The notes: generated by a model from the sequence alone, not told the origin. Shown: positions 17,450 to 64,000, counted from the stretch's first letter. The stretch: DNA of 64,000 nucleotides from Auanema rhodensis (GCA_964057225.1 OZ059895.1:18166001-18230000); one strand, 5' to 3'. Numbers and translations are program-made.

Positions 17450-17522
17450 GATCTCGTGGTGTAGTGGTTATCACATCTGTCTAACACACAGAAGGCCGGC
17501 GGTTCGAGCCCGCCCGAGATCA
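17450..17522 (+). tRNA. tRNA-Val-AAC: tRNA-Val(AAC)
   Basis: Acceptor stem GATCTCG/CGAGATC+A, D arm GTGTAGTGGTTATCAC, anticodon arm TCTGT-CT AAC AC-ACAGA, T arm GGCGG-TTCGAGC-CCGCC. A TTTT run lies about 5 nt downstream. Confidence 0.97.
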
Positions 17523-49873: not shown

Positions 49874-51164
49874 TCAAATTCGGATATGGAAAGTACGTAT
49901 AAAATCTGGTGATCGACTGACTACATGCTCAAATTCTGCGTAGTTAATACGGTCATCACCGTCTAAATCAGCTTCTTCAATTATCTAGAAAAAAACATAT
50001 GGTTAACATAAAGTTGGAGATACACATGAGGAATCAACTAACCCTTTCTATGATGAATTCAACTTCTTCGTCTGTGAGTTCATCTCTCGTTAAGCTTCGG
50101 ATCATTTTTGATAAATCGTCATGACCAAGATGATCATCACTATCGAAATCTAAAACAAATACCCGATAAGCTATTACGAATTATGATTTCTGACTATACC
50201 GTATATTCGAAAAGCATATTTCAATTTCAGTTGTAATGGAGCCATTTCAGAAAATACAGAGAACATGTCTAAGAAATCATCAAAAGTAAGGTTTCCTCGT
50301 CCATCATCTGAGAATACTTCGCAGATACGCCGACGAAATGGGTTTTCCTAAAACAAATTCAATAGATAATTTGAACATTTCAAAGTTTGCATTTGGACCA
50401 TCTGCTATGATGCAGCAAAAATTTCAAGCATGATAAGCATATCACAGTAACCTGTCACACAACTCAGTCAGAAGACATCTGATTGAGATACACTCAATCA
50501 TATCGCTGAAGTCTCTGTGTGATTGTTTTGTTGCAGAAACAACATCAGCAGCACCGTTAAGACAATTACATCCAAAAGCTGAACGTTACTTACTCGCAAC
50601 TCAGGCATTTTCTCTATCTCCTCAAACGTTAGAGACACAATTGATGGTCTGTTTCCTTGCATATTTGTTGGAACTTTTTGTGGATTTAGAGCATAAAATC
50701 GTTTATATAGCCGAATAATATCTTTTCGTGTAAAAAATGTGCAATCCTGAAAATTAGAAATATTTATTTGGAAACGCAATTGGCTGAAAATTTAATTTTG
50801 AATTTGAAAAAAACAGAATTCTTTTCTTTTTTATTTTTTTTAGTTTCTTTTTACTTCACAATAAAATTTTAGACAGATTTGAAATAATTCTACAATGGAT
50901 GGGTTAGTGTACAGAAAGCTTGAACAATGAGGATTGGAAGTTTATGTCTAAAACTTATTTCACATCGAATCGTATTTGTTTGCAGCTCAGCACAATAAAG
51001 TTTTCTTTTTTCTTTTATCGAAAAAGAAATAAATAATAGCTTTTGATGAATATAAATAAAAAATCAAAATAGAATACCTGATATTCATCCAGCTGTTCTC
51101 GAGTAAAGACACCGCCTTTGGAAAATAAATTCAAATCCGACAGCGAACTGCCGCTGTTACCCAT
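49874..51164 (-). CDS. calm-1: Calcium- and integrin-binding (CIB) EF-hand protein
   Basis: MGNSGSS (myristoylation-type start), [94 protein letters not shown]. The C-terminus is typical of CIB2/3. Confidence 0.95.
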
Positions 51165-53408
51165 TAGGAAAAACTGAAGGCAAAATGATAAATGGTGATT
51201 ATATGAAAGTTTTATAAAGCCAAATAAAACTGCAATTCAAGAAATTGAAGAATAAATGGAAATGAAACTCTATTTCAAAGCAAAGGAATAACATGAGAGT
51301 CGAAGCAGACATTCTAATGATAGACTAAATTGATTTGATAAACAAAAATATGTTGAAGTATGTATAAAAAGAAAATACTAGGGAATAATGAAGTAGAGGA
51401 ACAAGGGAAGTCAAATAGATACAGAGAGATAGAGATAGACAGGGGATGGATGAAATATAAATTGATTCTTGAGGTTGTCAGCTATTTAGAAAATAAAATT
51501 TTGAACGAAATCTGAGACTGTTTTCTTGAGTTTCTTTTTCTTTCAAATTCATTTTTCATTTTTTCATTAAGAAAACTGATGATTTTTTCATTCAATTCGT
51601 CAGCTGACAAGACGATTGACGTCGATAGATCCAATGTTATCGAGGGAAGTGGTTGTGAAAAACGTTTATACAGTTCATTTGTTATTTTGACGATACATTC
51701 ATAATTTTGAAAATTCAATTATGTGAATTTAACTGTAAAAAATGAACAGTACATATAGTTTAAGGGTGTTAAAAAAGAAATTATAGAAAATAGAATTGGA
51801 CAAAAACATCTATTAAAATAAATTTATTTCTTTTATATTTTAATTATAATAATAATAATTAAATAATATTTATTATGCACCTAATATATTGAACTTGAAT
51901 CTTTTATTAATTTAACATTGAGGCTGTTTATTTGTTTTGAGTTAGAATGCTTTAAAGCATTTACTAAAAACATAAATTGCTATTTAAAGATATAATGAAT
52001 ACATTTTTTATCTACATATTAAAATAAAATTCACTGTAAATAATAAATTAAATATAAAAAGTTAAATGAATGACTTGTTAGTTTTTGAAAATAACAAGAA
52101 AAGAAATTGTCTCGATTTATTGGCAGAAAATGCTGGAGGCAATTGGTTGAGAGATGTGCATAGCCTGGTTGGGTGATGTGTGGGGGAGAACAGATAGATT
52201 GGAAACAGAGAGAAAGTGGAAAAGAGAATGAGGGATAGAGAGAAAGAGGGATTGTGCAAGAGAAAACGGAAAATAGACGAGAGAAAGGGGATCTTTAATG
52301 TGGAAGAAGGGATAGTATGTTGTCTACCAGTCTGCACTCTATTTCTCAGTTTTTCTCTTCTTTTCTTACTTTATCTATATCTTTGGCTGTCTCTCTATGA
52401 CATCATTTAACTTTCTAATATTTCATTTTCTCTCATTCTCTCTTAGGCTTTCACTCTCTTCATCAAGTGCACTCTCTCAATCGATGCAGCTGACTACTGC
52501 CGGTATGATGATTGCTAGATAGTACAAACAGATATATGATATCTGAGAGAGCAACAGAGAATAAGAAGAATTCATTGTAAAATGGACATTTCATTATCAA
52601 GTTGAGAGAACAGACAATGACTTGCATTACATAGTAAGGAACACATCGAAGAATGGACATTGGCAGGTCAAAAACCTCAATTTCGCACCCCTCCCATTTC
52701 AATTCCCCCAAAACGTTTCAAAAAGAATATGCAAAGATGTAATCATTAGATTTGTGGTTAGTTTATGTATGATATAGTAATAGTAAAGATATGAGTAAAA
52801 TATAAAGAGAAAGATAGCAACAAAGTATTAGTGTGTATAGGAGAAAGAGAGACAAAGATGAAAAAGGAATGCATTTGCTTTGGGAGAAGGATGAATGTCC
52901 TTTGAGACTGGATCAACATATGAAAACATTTCACTGACTTAAGCCTTCAACTATATGAAATATTTATTTCAATTCTATGTTAAACTACAATTACAAAAAA
53001 GAAGTTAATTAGAAACGTTATTAATATTAATATGCATAAACAAGATTAAGCAAAAAGTAGATTCATAAAAGATAATTATTTTCCAGTAAAATCAATTTTT
53101 TTGACCATTTTCTTATTTTTATTATATAAAAGCAGTAAAATAGCTTTTAACACAAGCTATAAATGGCGTTTGCAGTTTAAAGTTGTCTACCAATTCAATC
53201 AACCGAGCTTCCGTTTGTTGCTCCAGTTGACGAATGGCTTACTAGCTAAGGGAGTACATGAGCAGAGCAATCAAAGGAAATATATTGTTGAGGTAGAGAG
53301 GTGGATGGAGATCAAAAGAGAGCGTTGCTTTAGCTCAATTGAACTTGAAGCCAAATTAAAAATTAAACCGAGCAAAAACATTAAACAGGTCGTATTTGTG
53401 TCCCAGTT

Positions 53409-55559
53409 CTAAAAGCGTGGAATGCCATCCTGTTCAGCAAGAGCAGCTCTCTTCAAATTCTCAATGATTGTTGTCTGATCTACATATTCAAAGACATTAG
53501 GCGCTGAAAACAGAATTCCCATTGTGCCAGTAGCTGTTACTGAAATCATAATTATGTATAAAATATAATATTTGATATAAAAATAATTTAACATTTAAAA
53601 ATATATCATAAATTGCCTATTAAAATCTTATGTGCAGCTGTTCCCGTGAAAAATACACAAAGAGCAAAATAAGTTTATCTTCTTTTTTAAATGAAATTTT
53701 TTTTCTGTTTTTATCGAAAATCAGTGGAAAACTTTTAGACGATATGGCTGAAGTTTTCAAATGGAAATCATGAAAAAAATATTTTGCACTTATTTTCGAG
53801 AGTTTTCTTCTAATATTTTGAACAGCATATATTTCTATTGCAATCTAAGAAGCTTTTATATTTTTGACAAATATACTTACCGGCAAAGAAAACATAAAGC
53901 AGAAGACGATCAACTACCATTGATACAAATTTCCATTCATCCCGTTGCTTAAATGTATGAAAAAATGGAAAATGTTATTTGGCTAAACCAACTCTTTTAT
54001 CGTTATTATCATGTGTTAGATGTTGAGTTATGTATTCAATAGCTTCGATTGCTTTTTTAGCATCATCCGATAAAGCTTCTTCTTTGTTTCCTGGCGTCAT
54101 AACAATGGATTTTTTACAATCATCATTCTGCAACGATAGTAGGTAAAGTATATCGAATGTTTTGTCTGAAATCAAACTATAATATACCGAATGACTGAGC
54201 TTCTTGTGAGGTTTACTATCTTCTAACTGAAAAAAACTATAATGTTGGAATCACTTCAAACACTACCTTTGTTTTGTCATCCTCAGGTCCGCGTACGTGA
54301 ATTTGTGGCATCGTTTTATTCATGGATCCGTAACTTGATTTAAATGATGATGAAGCTTTGCATGTTCTATCACGTCTAAGGGAAATTGAACTGCCATCCG
54401 GTGATTGTGGACGTTTCATTACGAGAAGCAATGGCAAATACTGGTAAATATTTGATTAATGAATTCCTAAATAGTAACAAACCTTGAGAAAAACTGTTCG
54501 AACCCATGGCTGCATTGTATGCGTGGCAGGACCACGAAAATATAAATTTATTATAATTACAGTAACCTGTTAACAAAAAGAAAATTATTTATGATATCAA
54601 CAAAAAGACTGTGTAATACCATGATGGTGATCATGTTCATAACAAATGTAAGTAAAAGATATTTAGCCATCAAAGGAATAGTGGAAGAAGTTGGAGGTAA
54701 AATCTATAAGGGAACATGAAAATAAAAATGGAATTCTCGAATATGAAATTTCATACCACACCTTTGATACTAAAAGCAGAAAAACAACAAGTGCTAATAA
54801 AATGCTTATAGCAAGTGTGATTTTCTCGCTAGCTTCACACGGTAAATAAAAAACGGACATTGACAAAAAAGCCATGAGTACGGTAGGCATTATGAGAATA
54901 ACAGTATAGAATAATGTTTTTCTGAAAAGTACATACAATTACTGAGGAATCTGATAGACAAGAGGAATCTGATAGAAAATACCGCCTGATACGTATTTGA
55001 TATGATATTTTAGACTTATTCTCGCGTAAATGTCCCGGAACTTCTAATACATCCCAAACACCACTAGGTGAGAAATCATTTAGCTCAGCCTACATCAGAC
55101 GAGAAAACCAAGATAGTTAAAACAAATGTTTCAAAAATACCTGTCTTTTTCCCTCGAGATAATCTATTTTTACCTCATCAAAATTAAATGTCCACGAACC
55201 AAATGTCAAACTACATACTTGTTCTTGAAGCCCCTGTTTCCAAAAGAATAAACTAAATTGAAAATGCAAACCATCAAACGGAAAAAATTCCACATCAATA
55301 ATACAGCTGCTTTTGTATACAGCTGGTGGAACCCACAACATTTCTCCGGTATGTTCCACTACTACGTTAGAATAGAAACTAACAAGATAATTACCGTCCG
55401 CACTGAAAAAGAAACAAAAAAAATTAATAAGAATCCAATAATATCAAACTTGTTAAATAAAACTATATCAGGCAACCAAACCTTCTCAGGGGGAACTCGA
55501 ATAGTTTTTATTCCTCCATATTCTCTTGGATCCCATTTCATTTGATAATCCGACCACCT
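53409..55559 (-). CDS. acr-3: Nicotinic acetylcholine receptor non-alpha subunit (UNC-29 group, most like ACR-3); 5' exons lie outside the window
   Basis: [22 protein letters not shown], Cys-loop [20 protein letters not shown], no vicinal Cys-Cys in loop C, TM1 [22 protein letters not shown]2 [41 protein letters not shown]4 [13 protein letters not shown], stop at 53409. The nAChR call is very secure. The acr-3 assignment is from remembered TM2/TM3 similarity and is less secure. Confidence 0.88.
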
Positions 55560-55612
55560 CTGAACAATAATAAAAGCACATCAACATTTAACAGAAAAAA
55601 ATTGAAAAAAAC

Positions 55613-55623
55613 AAAAACAAAAA
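55613..55623 (-). terminator. Pol III oligo-T terminator of the last tRNA-Ala copy (repeated in every unit)
   Basis: TTTTTGTTTT starts 7 nt after the discriminator base on the minus strand in every unit. Confidence 0.85.
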
Positions 55624-55630
55624 GGATTTC

Positions 55631-58600
55631 TGGAGATATGGGGAATTGAACCCCAGCCCTCTCCCATGCTAAGGGAGCGCTCTACCACTGAGCTATATCC
55701 CCACACATGTACGTGTTTCAAGTTGTATATTCAAACCTTCAGTACCTCGAGACTATAAATGAAATATTGGAGGTGAAACCAAGTGCTGTCTACGTTCTTT
55801 CAAATAGAAATTAATAGAATACTTTCTGTATTATGACGCTTGAAGCATTTCCCAATGTCTTTATCTTCTACATTTTCAAAACAAAAAGGATTTCTGGAGA
55901 TATGGGGAATTGAACCCCAGCCCTCTCCCATGCTAAGGGAGCGCTCTACCACTGAGCTATATCCCCACACATGTACGTGTTTCAAGTTGTATAATCAAAC
56001 CTTCAGTACCTCGAGACTATAAATGAAATATTGGAGGTGAAACCAAGTGCTGTCTACGTTGTTTCAAATAGAAATTAATAGAATACTTTCTGTATTATGA
56101 CGCTTGAAGCATTTCCCAATGTCTTTATCTTCTACATTTTCAAAACAAAAAGGATTTCTGGAGATATGGGGAATTGAACCCCAGCCCTCTCCCATGCTAA
56201 GGGAGCGCTCTACCACTGAGCTATATCCCCCCACACATGTACGTGTTTCAAGTTGTTTATTCAAACCTTCAGTACCTCGAGACTATAAATGAAATATTGG
56301 AGGTGAAACCAAGTGCTGTCTACGTTGTTTCAAATAGAAATTAATAGAATACTTTCTGTATTATGACGCTTGAAGCATTTCCCAATGTCTTTATCTTCTA
56401 CATTTTCAAAACAAAAAGGATTTCTGGAGATATGGGGAATTGAACCCCAGCCCTCTCCCATGCTAAGGGAGCGCTCTACCACTGAGCTATATCCCCACAC
56501 ATGTACGTGTTTCAAGTTGTATAATCAAACCTTCAGTACCTCGAGACTATAAATGAAATATTGGAGGTGAAACCAAGTGCTGTCTACGTTGTTTCAAATA
56601 GAAATTAATAGAATACTTTCTGTATTATGACGCTTGAAGCATTTCCCAATGTCATTATCTTCTACATTTTCAAAACAAAAAGGATTTCTGGAGATATGGG
56701 GAATTGAACCCCAGCCCTCTCCCATGCTAAGGGAGCGCTCTACCACTGAGCTATATCCCCACACATGTACGTGTTTCAAGTTGTATAATCAAACCTTCAG
56801 TACCTCGAGACTATAAATGAAATATTGGAGGTGAAACCAAGTGCTGTCTACGTTCTTTCAAATAGAAATTAATAGAATACTTTCTGTATTATGACGCTTG
56901 AAGCATTTCCCAATGTCTTTATCCTCTACATTTTCAAAACAAAAAGGATTTCTGGAGATATGGGGAATTGAACCCCAGCCCTCTCCCATGCTAAGGGAGC
57001 GCTCTACCACTGAGCTATATCCCCCCACACATGTACGTGTTTCAAGTTGTTTATTCAAACCTTCAGTACCTCGAGACTATAAATGAAATATTGGAGGTGA
57101 AACCAAGTGCTGTCTACGTTGTTTCAAATAGAAATTAATAGAATACTTTCTGTATTATGACGCTTGAAGCATTTCCCAATGTCATTATCTTCTACATTTT
57201 CAAAACAAAAAGGATTTCTGGAGATATGGGGAATTGAACCCCAGCCCTCTCCCATGCTAAGGGAGCGCTCTACCACTGAGCTATATTCCCACACATGTAC
57301 GTGTTTCAAGTTCTTTATTCAAACCTACAGTACCTCGAGCCTATAAATGAAATATTGGAGGTGAAACCAAGTGCTGTCTACGTTGTTTCAAATAGAAATT
57401 AATAGAATACTTTCTGTATTATGACGCTTGAAGCATTTTCCAATGTCATTATCTTCTACATTTTCAAAACAAAAAGGATTTCTGGAGATATGGGGAATTG
57501 AACCCCAGCCCTCTCCCATGCTAAGGGAGCGCTCTACCACTGAGCTATATCCCCACACATGTAAGTGTTTCAAGTTCTTTATTCAAACCTTCAGTACTTC
57601 GAGACTATAAATGAAATATTGGAGGTGAAACCAAGTGCTGTCTACGTTGTTTCAAATAGAAATTAATAGAATACTCTCTGTATTATGACGCTTGAAGCAT
57701 TTTCCAATGTCATTATCTTCTACATTTTCAAAACAAAAAGGATTTCTGGAGATATGGGGAATTGAACCCCAGCCCTCTCCCATGCTAAGGGAGCGCTCTA
57801 CCACTGAGCTATATCCCCACACATGTACGTGTTTCAAGTTGTTTATTCAAACCTTCAGTACTTCGAGACTATAAATGAAATATTGGAGGTGAAACCAAGT
57901 GCTGTCTACGTTGTTTCAAATAGAAATTAATAGAATACTCTCTGTATTATGACGCTTGAAGCATTTTCCAATGTCATTATCTTCTACATTTTCAAAACAA
58001 AAAGGATTTCTGGAGATATGGGGAATTGAACCCCAGCCCTCTCCCATGCTAAGGGAGCGCTCTACCACTGAGCTATATCCCCACACATGTACGTGTTTCA
58101 AGTTCTTTATTCAAACCTACAGTACCTCGAGACTATAAATGAAATATTGGAGGTGAAAACAAGTGCTGTCTACGTTGTTTCAAATAGAAATTAATAGAAT
58201 ACTTTCTGTATTATGACGCTTGAAGCATTTCCCAATGTCATTATCTTCTACATTTTCAAAACAAAAAGGATTTCTGGAGATATGGGGAATTGAACCCCAG
58301 CCCTCTCCCATGCTAAGGGAGCGCTCTACCACTGAGCTATATCCCCACACATGTACGTGTTTCAAGTTCTTTATTCAAACCTACAGTACCTCGAGCCTAT
58401 AAATGAAATATTGGAGGTGAAACCAAGTGCTGTCTACGTTGTTTCAAATAGAAATTAATAGAATACTTTCTGTATTATGACGCTTGAAGCATTTCTTAAT
58501 GGTATTATCTTCTACATTTTCAAAACAAAAAGGATTTCTGGAGATATGGGGAATTGAACCCCAGCCCTCTCCCATGCTAAGGGAGCGCTCTACCACTGAG

Positions 58601-61600
58601 CTATATCCCCACACATGTAAGTGTTTCAAGTTCTTTATTCAAACCTTCAGTACTTCGAGACTATAAATGAAATATTGGAGGTGAAACCAAGTGCTGTCTA
58701 CGTTGTTTCAAATAGAAATTAATAGAATACTTTCTGTATTATGACGCTTGAAGCATTTCTTAATGTCATTATCTTCTACATTTTCAAAACAAAAAGGATT
58801 TCTGGAGATATGGGGAATTGAACCCCAGCCCTCTCCCATGCTAAGGGAGCGCTCTACCACTGAGCTATATCCCCACACATATACGTGTTTCAAGTTCTTT
58901 ATTCAAACCTACAGTACCTCGAGACTATAAATGAAATATTGGAGGTGAAACCAAGTGCTGTCTACGTTGTTTCAAATAGAAATTAATAGAATACTTTCTG
59001 TATTATGACTCTTGAAGCATTTCCCAATGTCATTATCTTCTACATTTTCAAAACAAAAAGGATTTCTGGAGATATGGGGAATTGAACCCCAGCCCTCTTC
59101 CATGCTAAGGGAGCGCTCTACTACTGAGCTATATCTCCACACATGTACGTGTTTCAAGTTCTTTATTCAAACCTACAGTACCTCGAGACTATAAATGAAA
59201 TATTGGAGGTGAAACCAAGTGCTGTCTACGTTGTTTCAAATAGAAATTAATAGAATACTCTCTGTATTATGACGCTTGAAGCATTTTCCAATGTCATTAT
59301 CTTCTACATTTTCAAAACAAAAAGGATTTCTGGAGATATGGGGAATTGAACCCCAGCCCTCTCCCATGCTAAGGGAGCGCTCTACTACTGAGCTATATCC
59401 CCACACATATACGTGTTTCAAGTTCTTTATTCACACCTACAGTACCTCGAGACTATAAATGAAATATTGGAGGTGAAACCAAGTGCTGTCTACGTTGTTT
59501 CAAATAGAAATTAATAGAATACTTTCTGTATATTGACTCTTGAAGCATATCTTAATGTCATTATCTTCTACATTTTCAAAACAAAAAGGATTTCTGGAGA
59601 TATGGGGAATTGAACCCCAGCCCTCTCCCATGCTAAGGGAGCGCTCTACCACTGAGCTATATCCCCACACATGTACGTGTTTCAAGTTGTTTATTCAAAC
59701 CTACAGTACCTCGAGACTATAAATGAAATATTGGAGGTGAAACCAAGTGCTGTCTACGTTGTTTCAAATAGAAATTAATAGAATACTTTCTGTATATTGA
59801 CTCTTGAAGCATATCTTAATGTGATTATCTTCTACATTTTCAAAACAAAAAGGATTTCTGGAGATATGGGGAATTGAACCCCAGCCCTCTCCCATGCTAA
59901 GGGAGCGCTCTACCACTGAGCTATATCCCCACACATGTACGTGTTTTAAGTTGTTTATTCAAACCTTCAGTACCTCTAGACTATAAATGAAATATTGGAG
60001 GTGAAACCAAGTACTGTCTACGTTGTTTCAAATAGAAATCAATAGAATACTTTCTGTATTATGACGCTTGAAGCATTTCCCAATGTCATTATCTTCTACA
60101 TTTTCAAAACAAAAAGGATTTCTGGAGATATGGGGAATTGAACCCCAGCCCTCTCCCATGCTAAGGGAGCGCTCTACCACTGGGCTATATCCCCACACAT
60201 GTACGTGTTTCAAGTTCTTTATTCACACCTACAGTACCTCGAGACTATAAATGAAATATTGGAGGTGAAACCAAGTGCTGTCTACGTTGTTTCAAATAGA
60301 AATTAATAGAATACTTTCTGTATTATGACTCTTTAAGCATTTCTTAATGTCATTATCTTCTACATTTTCAAAACAAAAAGGATTTCTGGAGATATGGGGA
60401 ATTGAACCCCAGCCCTCTCCCATGCTAAGGGAGCGCTCTACCACTGAGCTATATCCCCACACATATACGTGTTTCAAGTTCTTTATTCACACCTACAGTA
60501 CCTCGAGACTATAAATGAAATATTGGAGGTGAAACCAAGTGCTGTCTACGTTGTTTTAAATAGAAATTAATAGAATACTTTCTGTATTATGACTCTTGAA
60601 GCATTTCTTAATGTCATCATCTTCTACATTTTCAAAACAAAAAGGATTTCTGGAGATATGGGGAATTGAACCCCAGCCCTCTCCCATGCTAAGGGAGCGC
60701 TCTACCACTGAGCTATATCCCCACACATGTACGTGTTTCAAGTTCTTTATTCAAACCTACAGTACCTCGAGACTATAAATGAAATATTGGAGGTGAAACC
60801 AAGTGCTGTCTACGTTGTTTCAAATAGAAATTAATAGAATACTTCCTGTATTATGACGCTTGAAGCATTTCTTAATGTCATTATCTTCTACATTTTCAAA
60901 ACAAAAAGGATTTCTGGAGATATGGGGAATTGAACCCCAGCCCTCTCCCATGCTAAGGGAGCGCTCTACTACTGAGCTATATCCCCACACATATACTTGT
61001 TTCAAGTTCTTTATTCACACCTACAGTACCTCGAGACTATAAATGAAATATTGGAGGTGAAACCAAGTGCTGTCTACGTTGTTTTAAATAGAAATTAATA
61101 GAATACTTTCTGTATTATGACTCTTGAAGCATTTCTTAATGTCATCATCTTCTACATTTTCAAAACAAAAAGGATTTCTGGAGATATGGGGAATTGAACC
61201 CCAGCCCTCTCCCATGCTAAGGGAGCGCTCTACCACTGAGCTATATCCCCACACATGTACGTGTTTCAAGTTCTTTATTCACACCTACAGTACCTCGAGA
61301 CTATAAATGAAATATTGGAGGTGAAACCAAGTGCTGTCTACGTTGTTTCAAATAGAAATTAATAGAATACTTTCTGTATATTGACTCTTGAAGCATATCT
61401 TAATGTCATTATCTTCTACATTTTCAAAACAAAAAGGATTTCTGGAGATATGGGGAATTGAACCCCAGCCCTCTCCCATGCTAAGGGAGCGCTCTACCAC
61501 TGAGCTATATCCCCACACATGTACGTGTTTCAAGTTCTTTATTCAAACCTACAGTACCTCGAGACTATAAATGAAATATTGGAGGTGAAACCAAGTGCTG

Positions 61601-63890
61601 TCTACGTTGTTTCAAATAGAAATTAATAGAATACTTCCTGTATTATGACGCTTGAAGCATTTCTTAATGTCATTATCTTCTACATTTTCAAAACAAAAAG
61701 GATTTCTGGAGATATGGGGAATTGAACCCCAGCCCTCTCCCATGCTAAGGGAGCGCTCTACTACTGAGCTATATCCCCACACATATACGTGTTTCATGTT
61801 CTTTATTCACACCTACAGTACCTCGAGACTATAAATGAAATATTGGAGGTGAAACCAAGTGCTGTCTACGTTGTTTCAAATAGAAATTAATAGAATACTT
61901 TCTGTATATTGACTCTTGAAGCATATCTTAATGTCATTATCTTCTACATTTTCAAAACAAAAAGGATTTCTGGAGATATGGGGAATTGAACCCCAGCCCT
62001 CTCCCATGCTAAGGGAGCGCTCTACTACTGAGCTATATCCCCACACATATACGTGTTTCAAGTTCTTTATTCACACCTACAGTACCTCGAGACTATAAAT
62101 GAAATATTGGAGGTGAAACCAAGTGCTGTCTACGTTGTTTCAAATAGAAATTAATAGAATACTTTCTGTATATTGACTCTTGAAGCATATCTTAATGTCA
62201 TTATCTTCTACATTTTCAAAACAAAAAGGATTTCTGGAGATATGGGGAATTGAACCCCAGCCCTCTCCCATGCTAAGGGAGCGCTCTACTACTGAGCTAT
62301 ATCCCCACACATATACGTGTTTCAAGTTCTTTATTCACACCTACAGTACCTCGAGACTATAAATGAAATATTGGAGGTGAAACCAAGTGCTGTCTACGTT
62401 GTTTCAAATAGAAATTAATAGAATACTTTCTGTATATTGACTCTTGAAGCATATCTTAATGTCATTATCTTCTACATTTTCAAAACAAAAAGGATTTCTG
62501 GAGATATGGGGAATTGAACCCCAGCCCTCTCCCATGCTAAGGGAGCGCTCTACTACTGAGCTATATCCCCACACATATACGTGTTTCAAGTTCTTTATTC
62601 ACACCTACAGTACCTCGAGACTATAAATGAAATATTGGAGGTGAAACCAAGTGCTGTCTACGTTGTTTCAAATAGAAATTAATAGAATACTTTCTGTATA
62701 TTGACTCTTGAAGCATATCTTAATGTCATTATCTTCTACATTTTCAAAACAAAAAGGATTTCTGGAGATATGGGGAATTGAACCCCAGCCCTCTCCCATG
62801 CTAAGGGAGCGCTCTACTACTGAGCTATATCCCCACACATATACGTGTTTCAAGTTCTTTATTCACACCTACAGTACCTCGAGACTATAAATGAAATATT
62901 GGAGGTGAAACCAAGTGCTGTCTACGTTGTTTCAAATAGAAATTAATAGAATACTTTCTGTATATTGACTCTTGAAGCATATCTTAATGTCATTATCTTC
63001 TACATTTTCAAAACAAAAAGGATTTCTGGAGATATGGGGAATTGAACCCCAGCCCTCTCCCATGCTAAGGGAGCGCTCTACTACTGAGCTATATCCCCAC
63101 ACATATACGTGTTTCAAGTTCTTTATTCACACCTACAGTACCTCGAGACTATAAATGAAATATTGGAGGTGAAACCAAGTGCTGTCTACGTTGTTTCAAA
63201 TAGAAATTAATAGAATACTTTCTGTATATTGACTCTTGAAGCATATCTTAATGTCATTATCTTCTACATTTTCAAAACAAAAAGGATTTCTGGAGATATG
63301 GGGAATTGAACCCCAGCCCTCTCCCATGCTAAGGGAGCGCTCTACCACTGAGCTATATCCCCACACATATACGTGTTTCAAGTTCTTTATTCACACCTAC
63401 AGTACCTCGAGACTATAAATGAAATATTGGAGGTGAAACCAAGTGCTGTCTACGTTGTTTTAAATAGAAATTAATAGAATACTTTCTGTATATTGACTCT
63501 TGAAGCATATCTTAATGTCATTATCTTCTACATTTTCAAAACAAAAAGGATTTCTGGAGATATGGGGAATTGAACCCCAGCCCTCTCCCATGCTAAGGGA
63601 GCGCTCTACCACTGAGCTATATCCCCACACATATACGTGTTTCAAGTTCTTTATTCACACCTACAGTACCTCGAGACTATAAATGAAATATTGGAGGTGA
63701 AACCAAGTGCTGTCTACGTTGTTTCAAATAGAAATTAATAGAATACTTTCTGTATTATGACTCTTGAAGCATTTCTTAATGTCATCATCTTCTACATTTT
63801 CAAAACAAAAAGGATTTCTGGAGATATGGGGAATTGAACCCCAGCCCTCTCCCATGCTAAGGGAGCGCTCTACCACTGAGCTATATCCCC
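55631..63890 (-). tRNA. tRNA-Ala-AGC: 32 tandem tRNA-Ala(AGC) genes (about 21 consensus, 11 variant)
   Basis: Consensus GGGGATATAGCTCAGTGGTAGAGCGCTCCCTTAGCATGGGAGAGGGCTGGGGTTCAATTCCCCATATCTCCA folds as a cloverleaf with anticodon AGC, G3:U70 and A73 alanine identity elements, and A and B boxes. The 72-bp copies have left coordinates 55631, 55895, 56159, 56425, 56689, 56953, 57219, then every 264 bp to 63819. Confidence 0.97.
59067..59138 (-). pseudogene. Degenerate tRNA-Ala(AGC) copy
   Basis: Three substitutions: G3>A (G3:U70 becomes A:U), G18>A in the D loop/A box, and a G>A creating a C:A mismatch in the anticodon stem. Confidence 0.75.
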
Positions 63891-64000
63891 ACACATGTAC
63901 GTGTTTCAAGTTCTTTATTCACACCTACAGTACCTCGAGACTATAAATGAAATATTGGAGGTGAAACCAAGTGCTGTCTACGTTGTTTCAAATAGAAATT

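What the first reader, a model, noticed from the sequence alone, without database searches (positions are those of the whole stretch)
55560..64000. Tandem array of at least 32 tRNA-Ala(AGC) genes apparently nested in an intron of a nicotinic acetylcholine receptor gene
Seen: 264-bp units, each with a full tRNA-Ala(AGC), internal A/B boxes and its own T-run terminator, on the same strand as the nAChR gene. The last tRNA ends only ~70 bp from the 3' splice site (ttcag at 55560-55564) of the RWSDYQ exon. The receptor's signal peptide and N-terminal exons are absent, so they must lie beyond the array. That makes this intron more than 8.4 kb, against ~45-330 nt for the other introns of the gene. 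The leftmost unit lacks downstream spacer, suggesting the array grew from one ancestral intronic tRNA. Known: C. elegans tRNA genes are mostly dispersed, though often intronic, and large single-isoacceptor tandem arrays are best known from Entamoeba and some plant and vertebrate clusters. Inference: the array could amplify tRNA-Ala dosage, or act as a TFIIIC/Pol III roadblock, insulator or chromatin hub that Pol II must cross to make a neuronal receptor mRNA. It could also be a copy-number-variable modulator of a cholinergic drug-target subunit.
Basis: partly seen in the sequence, partly recalled or inferred. Interest (0 to 1): 0.85.

Follow-up and report, generated by a model that had tools for sequence, protein, structure and literature searches.

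The report
Giant tRNA-Ala array inside acr-3 intron
A nematode acetylcholine-receptor gene (acr-3) carries, in an intron that is only about 50-110 bases long in related worms, one end of a huge head-to-tail array of apparently working alanine-tRNA genes, and the exons after the array are still transcribed and correctly spliced.

Summary
There are 32 tRNA-Ala(AGC) genes on the minus strand at 55630-63891. They form a 264-bp tandem repeat (55614-64000, 98% match) that runs off the window end. All 32 score 63-69.5 bits against Rfam tRNA.

The adjacent gene is the ACR-3 orthologue. It has 12 minus-strand exons (55559-53409) and lacks about 75 N-terminal residues. Spliced RNA contigs confirm nine of its 11 introns.

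The acceptor at 55560 sits at a conserved phase-0 intron position. That intron is 49 nt in Auanema sp. JU1783 and 113 nt in Mesorhabditis spiculigera, and C. briggsae has no intron there. None of the three has a tRNA in it. The array is therefore a lineage-specific gain, and no ancestral solo tRNA is seen.

The scan already noted the same array on DNA beyond this window. Those notes, which I did not check, imply about 150 kb and about 570 genes. They place the far end 27 nt after the acr-3 splice donor.

An August 2026 preprint on Auanema rhodense, the probable source species, reports 19,554 tRNA genes and mentions tRNA arrays. It does not mention this nesting.

No RNA joining the exons across the array was seen, so whether the receptor still works is inferred, not shown.

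The parts
55614..64000 (-). Proximal 8.4 kb of the tandem tRNA-Ala(AGC) array. The 264-bp unit is a 72-nt tRNA, a T-run terminator and a spacer of about 175 nt. There are 32 genes, and the array runs off the window end.
55631..55702 (-). The last (most 3') tRNA-Ala(AGC) gene of the array, with canonical sequence. Its terminator lies at 55613-55623.
   Evidence: Rfam 69.5 bits; sequence
55560..55613 (-). 54-nt T-rich remnant of the original small intron, ending in the 3' splice site attattgttcag.
   Evidence: Array homology ends at 55614. The DNA contig of run X9 at 55432-55643 runs exactly 30 nt into the repeat. The intron position is conserved in L002 and L003.
55450..55559 (-). acr-3 exon 3 (numbered after the JU1783 orthologue), phase 0. 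It encodes [16 protein letters not shown]...
   Evidence: An RNA contig covers 55450-55550 spliced to 55402. It is 76-83% identical to P0157.
53409..55402 (-). acr-3 exons 4-14, through the stop codon at 53409-53411. They encode the Cys-loop (C-x13-C), TM1-TM4 and the intracellular loop. There is no YxCC motif, so this is a non-alpha subunit.
   Evidence: Gene model. Eight of the introns in this stretch appear as GT..AG joints in RNA contigs of 3 runs (the ninth confirmed intron, 55402/55450, joins exon 3). The exon structure is identical in JU1783.
53025..53408 (-). acr-3 3' UTR, as covered by RNA contigs.
   Evidence: table 8 (contigs reach 53025-53144)

Best explanation
This is the 3'-proximal end of a very large head-to-tail array of Pol III tRNA-Ala genes. 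It lies inside intron 2 of the acr-3 acetylcholine-receptor gene of a nematode close to Auanema, probably A. rhodense.

The intron was ancestrally tiny, about 50-110 nt. A tRNA-Ala unit, or a piece of an existing array, entered it in this lineage. The junction falls in T-rich sequence just after a Pol III terminator. The array then grew by local unequal exchange or replication slippage, as tandem repeats do generally in this genome.

The tRNA genes keep everything needed for Pol III transcription and alanine charging. They probably add to the tRNA-Ala pool, but the copy number is far beyond need and individual copies are free to decay.

The host gene is not visibly damaged. It is most likely still made by Pol II reading through the co-oriented array and removing it as one giant intron.

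Shown: the array, the intact tRNA features, the conserved splice position, expression and splicing of the downstream exons, and absence of the insert in relatives. Inferred: Pol III activity, how the array grew, splicing across the array, the species, and the total size.
For: - Array: 32 genes, 264-bp period, 98% match. All score at least 63 bits in Rfam. Twenty-one of 32 are identical and canonical.
- Array dynamics: unit identity falls from 98.0% between neighbours to about 95% at 25 units apart, and variants form local blocks. This is the pattern expected from local unequal exchange.
- Constraint: the anticodon arm, T arm and terminator (unit positions 25-96) show one variable column in 72. 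Spacer segments reach pi 0.06-0.10. Overall, 5 of 72 tRNA columns vary against 36 of 194 spacer columns (Fisher p = 0.02).
- Host gene: 12 exons, 434 aa, 83% identical to the ACR-3 part of Auanema sp. JU1783 protein P0157. The best named hits are ACR-3.
- Conservation of the gene: the 12-exon structure is identical in JU1783. dN is 0.12 with dS saturated.
- Expression: RNA contigs of 3 runs show 9 introns removed exactly as modelled, including 55402/55450. They show no coverage of the introns or of the array.
- Orthologous intron: 49 nt in L003, 113 nt in L002, absent in L001, and no tRNA in any of these loci.
- Junction: DNA run X9 joins the unique flank to the repeat. Word depth is 13,000-74,000 over the unit against 10-17 in the flank.
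- Other windows (unchecked): notes describe the array continuing for about 142 kb beyond the window end. A follow-up note says it starts 27 nt after the conserved acr-3 donor.
- Literature: the A. rhodense germline assembly has 19,554 annotated tRNA genes and tRNA arrays (10.64898/2026.08.27.747507). Genome GC is 32% (PMC6469403) against about 30% in the window.
Against: - No RNA contig joins exon 3 to an upstream exon. The only contig covering exon 3 stops at 55550. Splicing across the array is therefore not shown.
- I could not read the DNA beyond 64000. The total size and the position of the 5' exons rest on unchecked notes of this scan.
- Eleven of 32 copies carry a change at a conserved position: G18A in 9 (one of them also with G3A and a further change), G4A in 1, and U12C in 1.
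- Part of the spacer (unit positions 145-216) is as invariant as the tRNA. The evidence for selection on the tRNA is therefore modest.
- Summed word depth is not a copy number.
- The species is inferred. The genome's own proteins are not in the protein collections.
Confidence: 0.7

Rival explanations
1. The array has broken acr-3. The 5' exons and the 12 downstream exons no longer form one mRNA. The transcripts seen come from initiation in or near the array, or from trans-splicing of a leader onto the 55560 acceptor. They encode no signal peptide, so the receptor subunit is lost.
For: No RNA crosses the 55559 boundary. An intron of about 150 kb packed with Pol III genes would be extreme in a genome whose other acr-3 introns are 40-341 nt. 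The first in-frame Met after the acceptor is residue 7, so a leaderless product would lack the signal peptide and the first beta strands. The follow-up note on the far end also left this open.
Against: All 12 exons are open. All 22 internal splice sites are intact and used where coverage allows. Exon 3 depth (5.5) is close to that of the 3' exons (8.8) in run X10, and no RNA covers 55560-55880. Units up to 5% apart suggest the array is not very young, yet the gene shows no decay. This last point is an inference and is weak if the array arrived already diverse.
Confidence: 0.17
2. Assembly artefact. The intron really holds a solo tRNA-Ala or a short array, and the assembler threaded a large array from elsewhere through it, or got its length wrong.
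For: Short-read contigs break 30 nt into the repeat, so they cannot tell a solo gene from an array. Run X9 also shows tRNA-Ala copies with other 5' flanks, so other loci exist (table 7).
Against: The units next to the junction form their own local variant block that grades into the next blocks, which looks like a natural array edge. An array of 98%-identical 264-bp units can only come from a long-read assembly, and an 88-nt shared repeat would not cause a false join there (inference). Both array ends are reported to abut the two halves of one gene. Spacer word depth is roughly a thousand times the flank depth.
Confidence: 0.06
3. The array is germline-restricted DNA that is removed from somatic cells by programmed DNA elimination. 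The receptor gene's structure would then differ between germline and soma.
For: [quoted passage not shown]
Against: The preprint describes elimination as breakage at 28 sites carrying a 29-nt palindromic motif, followed by telomere addition without rejoining. The eliminated blocks are multi-megabase and gene-poor. An array with genes on both sides fits a retained region. Elimination here would split a conserved neuronal gene onto two somatic chromosomes. The motif sequence is given only in a figure, so I could not search for it.
Confidence: 0.04

Closest known systems
Nested intronic tRNA genes of Caenorhabditis (43-44% of about 608 tRNA genes lie in introns; PMC3342880, PMC4999229)
   Same: A Pol III tRNA gene lies wholly inside an intron of a Pol II gene. 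In C. elegans the sense orientation occurs in 56% of such cases, and the host promoter can influence the nested tRNA (sup-7).
   Different: In C. elegans there is mostly one tRNA per host intron and the introns stay small. Here one intron holds at least 32 copies, and about 570 if the other windows' notes hold. It has grown from about 50-110 nt to tens or hundreds of kb. The nesting is not conserved in relatives.
Entamoeba tRNA gene arrays (almost all tRNA genes in 25 kinds of tandem array, over 10% of the genome; PMC2652664)
   Same: tRNA genes are organised genome-wide as long head-to-tail arrays of near-identical units.
   Different: Entamoeba units hold up to 5 different tRNAs, sometimes with 5S RNA, and microsatellite-like short repeats between the genes. 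This unit holds one tRNA and a non-repetitive spacer. The organism is an animal, and this array sits inside a protein-coding gene.
Human 1q23.3 tRNA variable-number tandem repeat (PMC4041453); also tRNA clusters in zebrafish chromosome 4, Xenopus and Arabidopsis chromosome 1 (the last three from my own knowledge)
   Same: Tandemly repeated tRNA-bearing units with variable copy number, proposed to act as boundary elements.
   Different: The human unit is 7.3 kb, carries several tRNAs, and has 9-43 copies per allele. Here the unit is 264 bp, carries a single isoacceptor, is far more numerous, and is intronic.
Auanema rhodense germline genome (bioRxiv 10.64898/2026.08.27.747507)
   Same: Probably the same organism. 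The preprint reports 19,554 annotated tRNA loci, only 215 of them called pseudogenes, and mentions tandem blocks of tRNA, 5S and U2 genes. It attributes the genome's repeat load to a general tendency to expand tandem repeats.
   Different: The text held here gives only genome-wide counts. It does not describe arrays inside introns, the acr-3 locus or the tRNA-Ala unit; 'intron' occurs only in a reference title.
tRNA-derived satellites and SINEs
   Same: Repeated DNA that descends from a tRNA gene. Another note of this scan describes a tRNA-Arg array decaying into a satellite in this genome.
   Different: Here the tRNA part is complete, scores as a normal tRNA and keeps its terminator. These are genes, not relics.

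Membership tests
Eukaryotic nuclear tRNA-Ala gene (Pol III type 2 promoter) | Cloverleaf that matches the tRNA covariance model | tested here: met
   All 32 copies score 63.2-69.5 bits against RF00005, gathering score 29.
Eukaryotic nuclear tRNA-Ala gene (Pol III type 2 promoter) | Alanine anticodon and the G3:U70 identity pair | tested here: met
   ARAGORN calls anticodon AGC in all 32. G3 and U70 are read from the sequence in 31 of 32; one copy has A3.
Eukaryotic nuclear tRNA-Ala gene (Pol III type 2 promoter) | Internal box A and box B, and a downstream run of at least 4 T | tested here: met
   TAGCTCAGTGG and GGTTCAATTCC are present, with T5 then T4 starting 7 nt after the tRNA. Nine copies have A at position 18 inside box A.
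Eukaryotic nuclear tRNA-Ala gene (Pol III type 2 promoter) | Transcribed by Pol III and charged with alanine | not testable with these tools
   The RNA runs available show spliced mRNA and no tRNA-sized signal. Depth over the array is 0, which says nothing about small RNAs.
Tandem tRNA gene array | Head-to-tail repetition of a unit that contains a whole tRNA gene, many copies, high identity | tested here: met
   Period 264, 31.8 copies, 98% match in the window. Summed word depth over the unit is about a thousand times the flank depth in DNA run X9 (rough).
Nested (intronic) tRNA gene | 3' side: the insert is followed by a used 3' splice site of the host gene | tested here: met
   The acceptor at 55560 is at the conserved phase-0 position, as in L002 and L003. 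The exon after it occurs in spliced RNA.
Nested (intronic) tRNA gene | 5' side: a host exon and splice donor lie upstream of the insert, and mRNA joins the two exons | tested here: inconclusive
   The upstream DNA is outside the window. Notes of this scan report the donor 27 nt from the far end of the array. No RNA contig crosses the junction.
Nematode non-alpha nicotinic receptor subunit ACR-3 | Cys-loop receptor architecture: ligand-binding domain with C-x13-C, four TM segments, no YxCC in loop C | tested here: met
   The translation shows C-x13-C, TM1-TM4, and ISYQIRIRR in place of YxCC. The homologues carry PF02931 and PF02932.
Nematode non-alpha nicotinic receptor subunit ACR-3 | Orthology to acr-3 rather than unc-29, lev-1 or acr-2 | tested here: met
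   It is 83% identical to the second half of the JU1783 acr-2/acr-3 fused model, and 64-72% to proteins named ACR-3 or their orthologues. Hits named lev-1 and most named unc-29 were only 50-57% identical to the search queries used, not to this protein itself. The exon structure is identical to JU1783 acr-3.
Nematode non-alpha nicotinic receptor subunit ACR-3 | Complete protein with signal peptide and N-terminal strands | tested here: not met
   About 75 N-terminal residues are absent from the whole window (tblastn). They are expected beyond the array.
tRNA-derived satellite or SINE | Degenerate or partial tRNA part with loss of gene features | tested here: not met
   The tRNAs are full length, score highly and keep their terminators.

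The most novel reading that the evidence does not exclude
acr-3 is still a working gene. Pol II then reads about 150 kb through some 570 co-oriented Pol III genes, and the spliceosome removes all of it as one intron, in a genome where neighbouring introns are about 50 nt. Either the array is silent in the neurons that express acr-3, or active tRNA genes do not stop Pol II. Either way this would be a natural test bed for Pol II/Pol III interference. The G18A copies could serve as built-in barcodes showing which parts of the array are expressed.
Probability: 0.5. Interest if true: 0.75.

Novelty: new variant of a known kind. Interest (0 to 1): 0.62.

Why it matters
tRNA genes nested in introns are ordinary in nematodes, and tandem tRNA arrays are known in a few eukaryotes. 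The combination here is not ordinary. A formerly tiny intron of a conserved, expressed neuronal receptor gene has been inflated by hundreds of intact, co-oriented Pol III genes.

If the receptor is still made, the locus shows how far a Pol II gene can tolerate Pol III units in its path. It also offers a tractable place to ask whether such arrays are silenced tissue by tissue.

If the receptor is not made, the locus shows runaway tRNA-array growth destroying a gene.

It also gives a concrete, datable example of how this genome reached about 19,500 tRNA genes, because the insert is absent from the congener.

Tried and rejected
- Finding this genome's own ACR-3 protein, and through it the DNA beyond the window. 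I ran a representative search with an exon piece and three homologue searches. None returned a protein of this genome, so the look-up of encoding contigs could not be used on it.
- P0157 and P0207 were not on record. The sister isoform P0419 was, and gave locus L003.
- A junction-spanning transcript. The single read-laying run found none; the exon-3 contig ends at 55550. Logan-derived protein fragments (P0380, P0329) are from other species, 75-82% identical.
- Higher-order repeat structure. None was found, only a decay of identity with distance.
- Decoy splice signals in the unit. There is no TTTCAG-type acceptor and no GTRAGT donor. One AATAAA lies 24-29 nt before each tRNA, more plausibly a TATA-like element (inference).
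- Searching for the elimination motif. Its sequence is only in a figure of the preprint.
- Synteny downstream of acr-3. The START and STAR/KH genes that follow acr-3 in JU1783 have no match in the window, so that side is rearranged between the species.
- A strong claim of selection on the tRNA part. I rejected this because part of the spacer is equally invariant.
- The spliced 434-aa protein has no reference, so I did not paste it into any search tool.
Full report
**1. The observation**

ARAGORN finds 32 tRNA-Ala(AGC) genes between 55630 and 63891, all on the minus strand and 264 bp apart. Tandem Repeats Finder reports one array at 55614-64000 with period 264, 31.8 copies, 98% matches and no indels. 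The array runs off the window end. All 32 copies match the Rfam tRNA model at 63.2-69.5 bits, against a gathering score of 29.

Read directly from the sequence, each unit carries:
- box A (TAGCTCAGTGG) and box B (GGTTCAATTCC);
- the G3:U70 pair that marks alanine tRNAs;
- discriminator A73;
- T5-G-T4 starting 7 nt after the tRNA.

Only one other tRNA gene lies in the other 55 kb of the window, a solo tRNA-Val at 17450.

**2. Anatomy of the array**

Twenty-one of the 32 tRNAs are identical and canonical. Nine carry G18A, and one of these also has G3A and an anticodon-stem change. One carries G4A and one carries U12C. G18 is a universally conserved D-loop base. These eleven copies are therefore probably weaker or dead, although they still score at least 63 bits.

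Aligning the 31 complete units gives 42 variable columns. Five of 72 are in the tRNA and 36 of 194 in the spacer (Fisher p = 0.02). Pairwise diversity is 0.0095 in the tRNA against 0.041 in the spacer. Unit positions 25-96 (anticodon arm, T arm, terminator) are almost invariant. Spacer positions 145-216 are nearly as invariant, however, so the case for selection on the tRNA is suggestive, not strong.

Variants come in local blocks. Mean identity falls from 98.0% between neighbours to about 95% at 25 units apart. That is the signature of local unequal exchange or slippage. I found no higher-order repeat, no inserted element in this stretch, and no strong decoy splice sites. The single AATAAA per unit lies 24-29 nt before each tRNA. 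I read it as a TATA-like upstream element; this is an inference.

**3. The host gene**

On the same strand I built a 12-exon model from 55559 to the stop at 53409. It encodes 434 aa with GT..AG at every intron. Intron sizes are 40-61 nt and one of 341 nt. The protein has the C-x13-C Cys-loop and four TM segments. It has no YxCC motif, so it is a non-alpha nicotinic subunit.

Its best match is the second half of an Auanema sp. JU1783 protein that fuses ACR-2 and ACR-3 (P0157, 83% identity over all 434 residues). Next come proteins named ACR-3 or their orthologues at 64-72%.

About 75 N-terminal residues are missing: the signal peptide and the stretch ending ...NVWPTM. They have no match anywhere in the window. 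The first in-frame Met after the acceptor is residue 7. A product made from these exons alone could not be a receptor subunit.

**4. RNA and DNA reads**

Three RNA runs give contigs that remove nine of the eleven introns exactly as modelled, including 55402/55450. They leave zero depth in the 341-nt intron and over the array. The libraries are therefore RNA, and the exons after the array are transcribed and spliced.

Exon 3 depth (5.5) is similar to that of the 3' exons (8.8) in run X10. The one contig that covers exon 3 stops at 55550, nine bases short of the exon edge. No read-through to an upstream exon, a leader or the array was seen. Coverage is too low to read anything into that.

In DNA run X9 a contig runs from the unique flank (55432) to 55643. 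That is exactly 30 nt, or k-1, into sequence shared with other copies, which places the repeat boundary at 55614 as TRF does. Summed word depth is 13,000-74,000 over the unit against 10-17 in the flank. The tool warns that this is not a copy number. It does fit a unit present on the order of a thousand times. Contigs with other 5' flanks show that further tRNA-Ala loci exist.

**5. The orthologous intron in relatives**

- Auanema sp. JU1783 (locus L003). An unc-63-like gene, acr-2 and acr-3 lie in one orientation within 11.4 kb, and the locus has no tRNA gene. The intron between ...NVWPTM and RWTDYQ... is 49 nt, phase 0. The twelve exons after it match mine in number and nearly all in length, with introns of 43-56 nt and 310 nt.
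- Mesorhabditis spiculigera (L002). The same intron position holds a 113-nt intron with no tRNA.
- C. briggsae (L001). There is no intron at that point, the whole gene is 2.5 kb, and there is no tRNA.

The acceptor at 55560 is therefore a genuine, conserved splice position. The array is a gain in this lineage, and no ancestral solo tRNA is visible.

Against JU1783, dN is 0.12 (0.065 in the ligand-binding and TM1-3 part) and dS is saturated. The gene has been under purifying selection. The comparison is too deep to date the insertion.

**6. Beyond the window**

I could not read past 64000. Earlier notes of this scan on the same sequence piece (AI notes, not checked by me) report the following:
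- interleaved AGC and CGC tRNA-Ala genes from +15,923 (s1-391646);
- at least 227 genes from +60,614 (s1-373270, s1-373243);
- at least 75 genes from +122,001 to about +141,941, 'inside an intron of acr-3' (s1-378766);
- an unc-63/acr-2/acr-3 cluster from +141,858 (s1-379074).

A follow-up agent on s1-378766 reports that the array starts 27 nt after a conserved splice donor. The scan has therefore already found the other end of this same array.

Taken together, these notes imply one array of about 150 kb and about 570 units. The remnant intron would be 27 + 54 nt. The gene order is the same as I verified in JU1783. Other notes describe arrays inside introns of other genes, some antisense, so the sense orientation here need not mean anything.

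**7. Species and literature**

The closest protein, the GC content (about 30% in the window; 32.2% reported for A. rhodensis in PMC6469403) and the dates of the matching runs all point to Auanema rhodense. I did not prove this.

A preprint of August 2026 (10.64898/2026.08.27.747507) describes its 180-Mb germline genome. It reports:
- 19,554 annotated tRNA loci, only 215 called pseudogenes, against about 500 in the older collapsed assembly;
- tandem blocks of 5S, tRNA and U2 genes;
- elimination of about 61% of the genome at 28 motif-marked break sites.

The text held here says nothing about arrays in introns or about acr-3. The genome-wide excess of tRNA genes is thus already reported in summary form. 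This locus and this kind of nesting are not.

Background for comparison:
- 43-44% of C. elegans tRNA genes are intronic, mostly one per intron, and 56% are in sense orientation. A host promoter can affect a nested tRNA (PMC3342880, PMC4999229).
- Entamoeba keeps nearly all its tRNA genes in arrays (PMC2652664).
- Humans have a variable tRNA repeat at 1q23.3 (PMC4041453).

**8. Reading**

Most likely (0.7), a tRNA-Ala unit or array fragment entered a tiny acr-3 intron in this lineage. The junction lies in T-rich sequence right after a terminator. The insert then expanded by unequal exchange. Its genes are largely intact and probably active. The host gene survives by removing the whole array as one giant intron.

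The main rival (0.17) is that the gene is now split and the transcripts seen are non-functional. Assembly error (0.06) and germline-restricted DNA (0.04) are less likely, for the reasons given under each rival.

The decisive experiment is a cDNA read or RT-PCR across the exon 2-exon 3 junction.

**9. Verdict**

- the nesting is well supported;
- the size is greatly underestimated;
- the 'ancestral solo tRNA' idea is not supported in relatives;
- the functional ideas are untested.

This is a new variant of known kinds (intronic tRNA genes; tandem tRNA arrays). Interest is 0.62.

Noticed in passing
window 59067-63098 (units with A at tRNA position 18): Nine of 32 copies carry G18A, a change at a universally conserved D-loop base inside box A. 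Six of them lie in one run of consecutive units (61707-63098). This gives a natural barcode for asking by tRNA sequencing which parts of the array are expressed.
   Followed up: partly
L003 5001-11395 (Auanema sp. JU1783); many proteins: Public annotations of many nematodes fuse the adjacent acr-2 and acr-3 genes into one model of about 1000 aa (P0157, P0419, P0151-P0163). This is most likely an annotation artefact of two tightly spaced co-oriented genes.
   Followed up: partly
window 50500-53400 versus L003 11400-16395: The genes that follow acr-3 in JU1783 (a START-domain gene and a STAR/KH gene) have no match in this window. Here the next minus-strand gene starts near 51166 with MGNSGSS..., which looks like an EF-hand protein. 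Synteny on that side therefore differs between the two species.
   Followed up: partly
window 17450-17522 (+): A solo tRNA-Val(AAC) is the only other tRNA gene in the window. It is an example of the ordinary dispersed arrangement in the same genome.
   Followed up: no
window 55688-55708 (run X9, table 7): Several DNA contigs share the tRNA-Ala body but continue into different 5' flanks. Further tRNA-Ala loci or arrays with other spacers therefore exist in the genome.
   Followed up: no
window 53474-53494 and 54772 (RNA runs, table 7): All three RNA runs have a contig that matches only about 21 nt at 53474-53494 and then runs into unrelated sequence, and a loose end at 54772. These are probably short shared words with a paralogous receptor transcript, or contig ends at a splice joint.
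   Followed up: no
window 55224-55271: The 48-nt intron inside the Cys-loop coding region is in frame and has no stop codon. A raw ORF scan therefore reads through it and adds 16 false residues between FPFD and EQVC. The spliced form restores C-x13-C and matches the JU1783 exon structure.
   Followed up: yes
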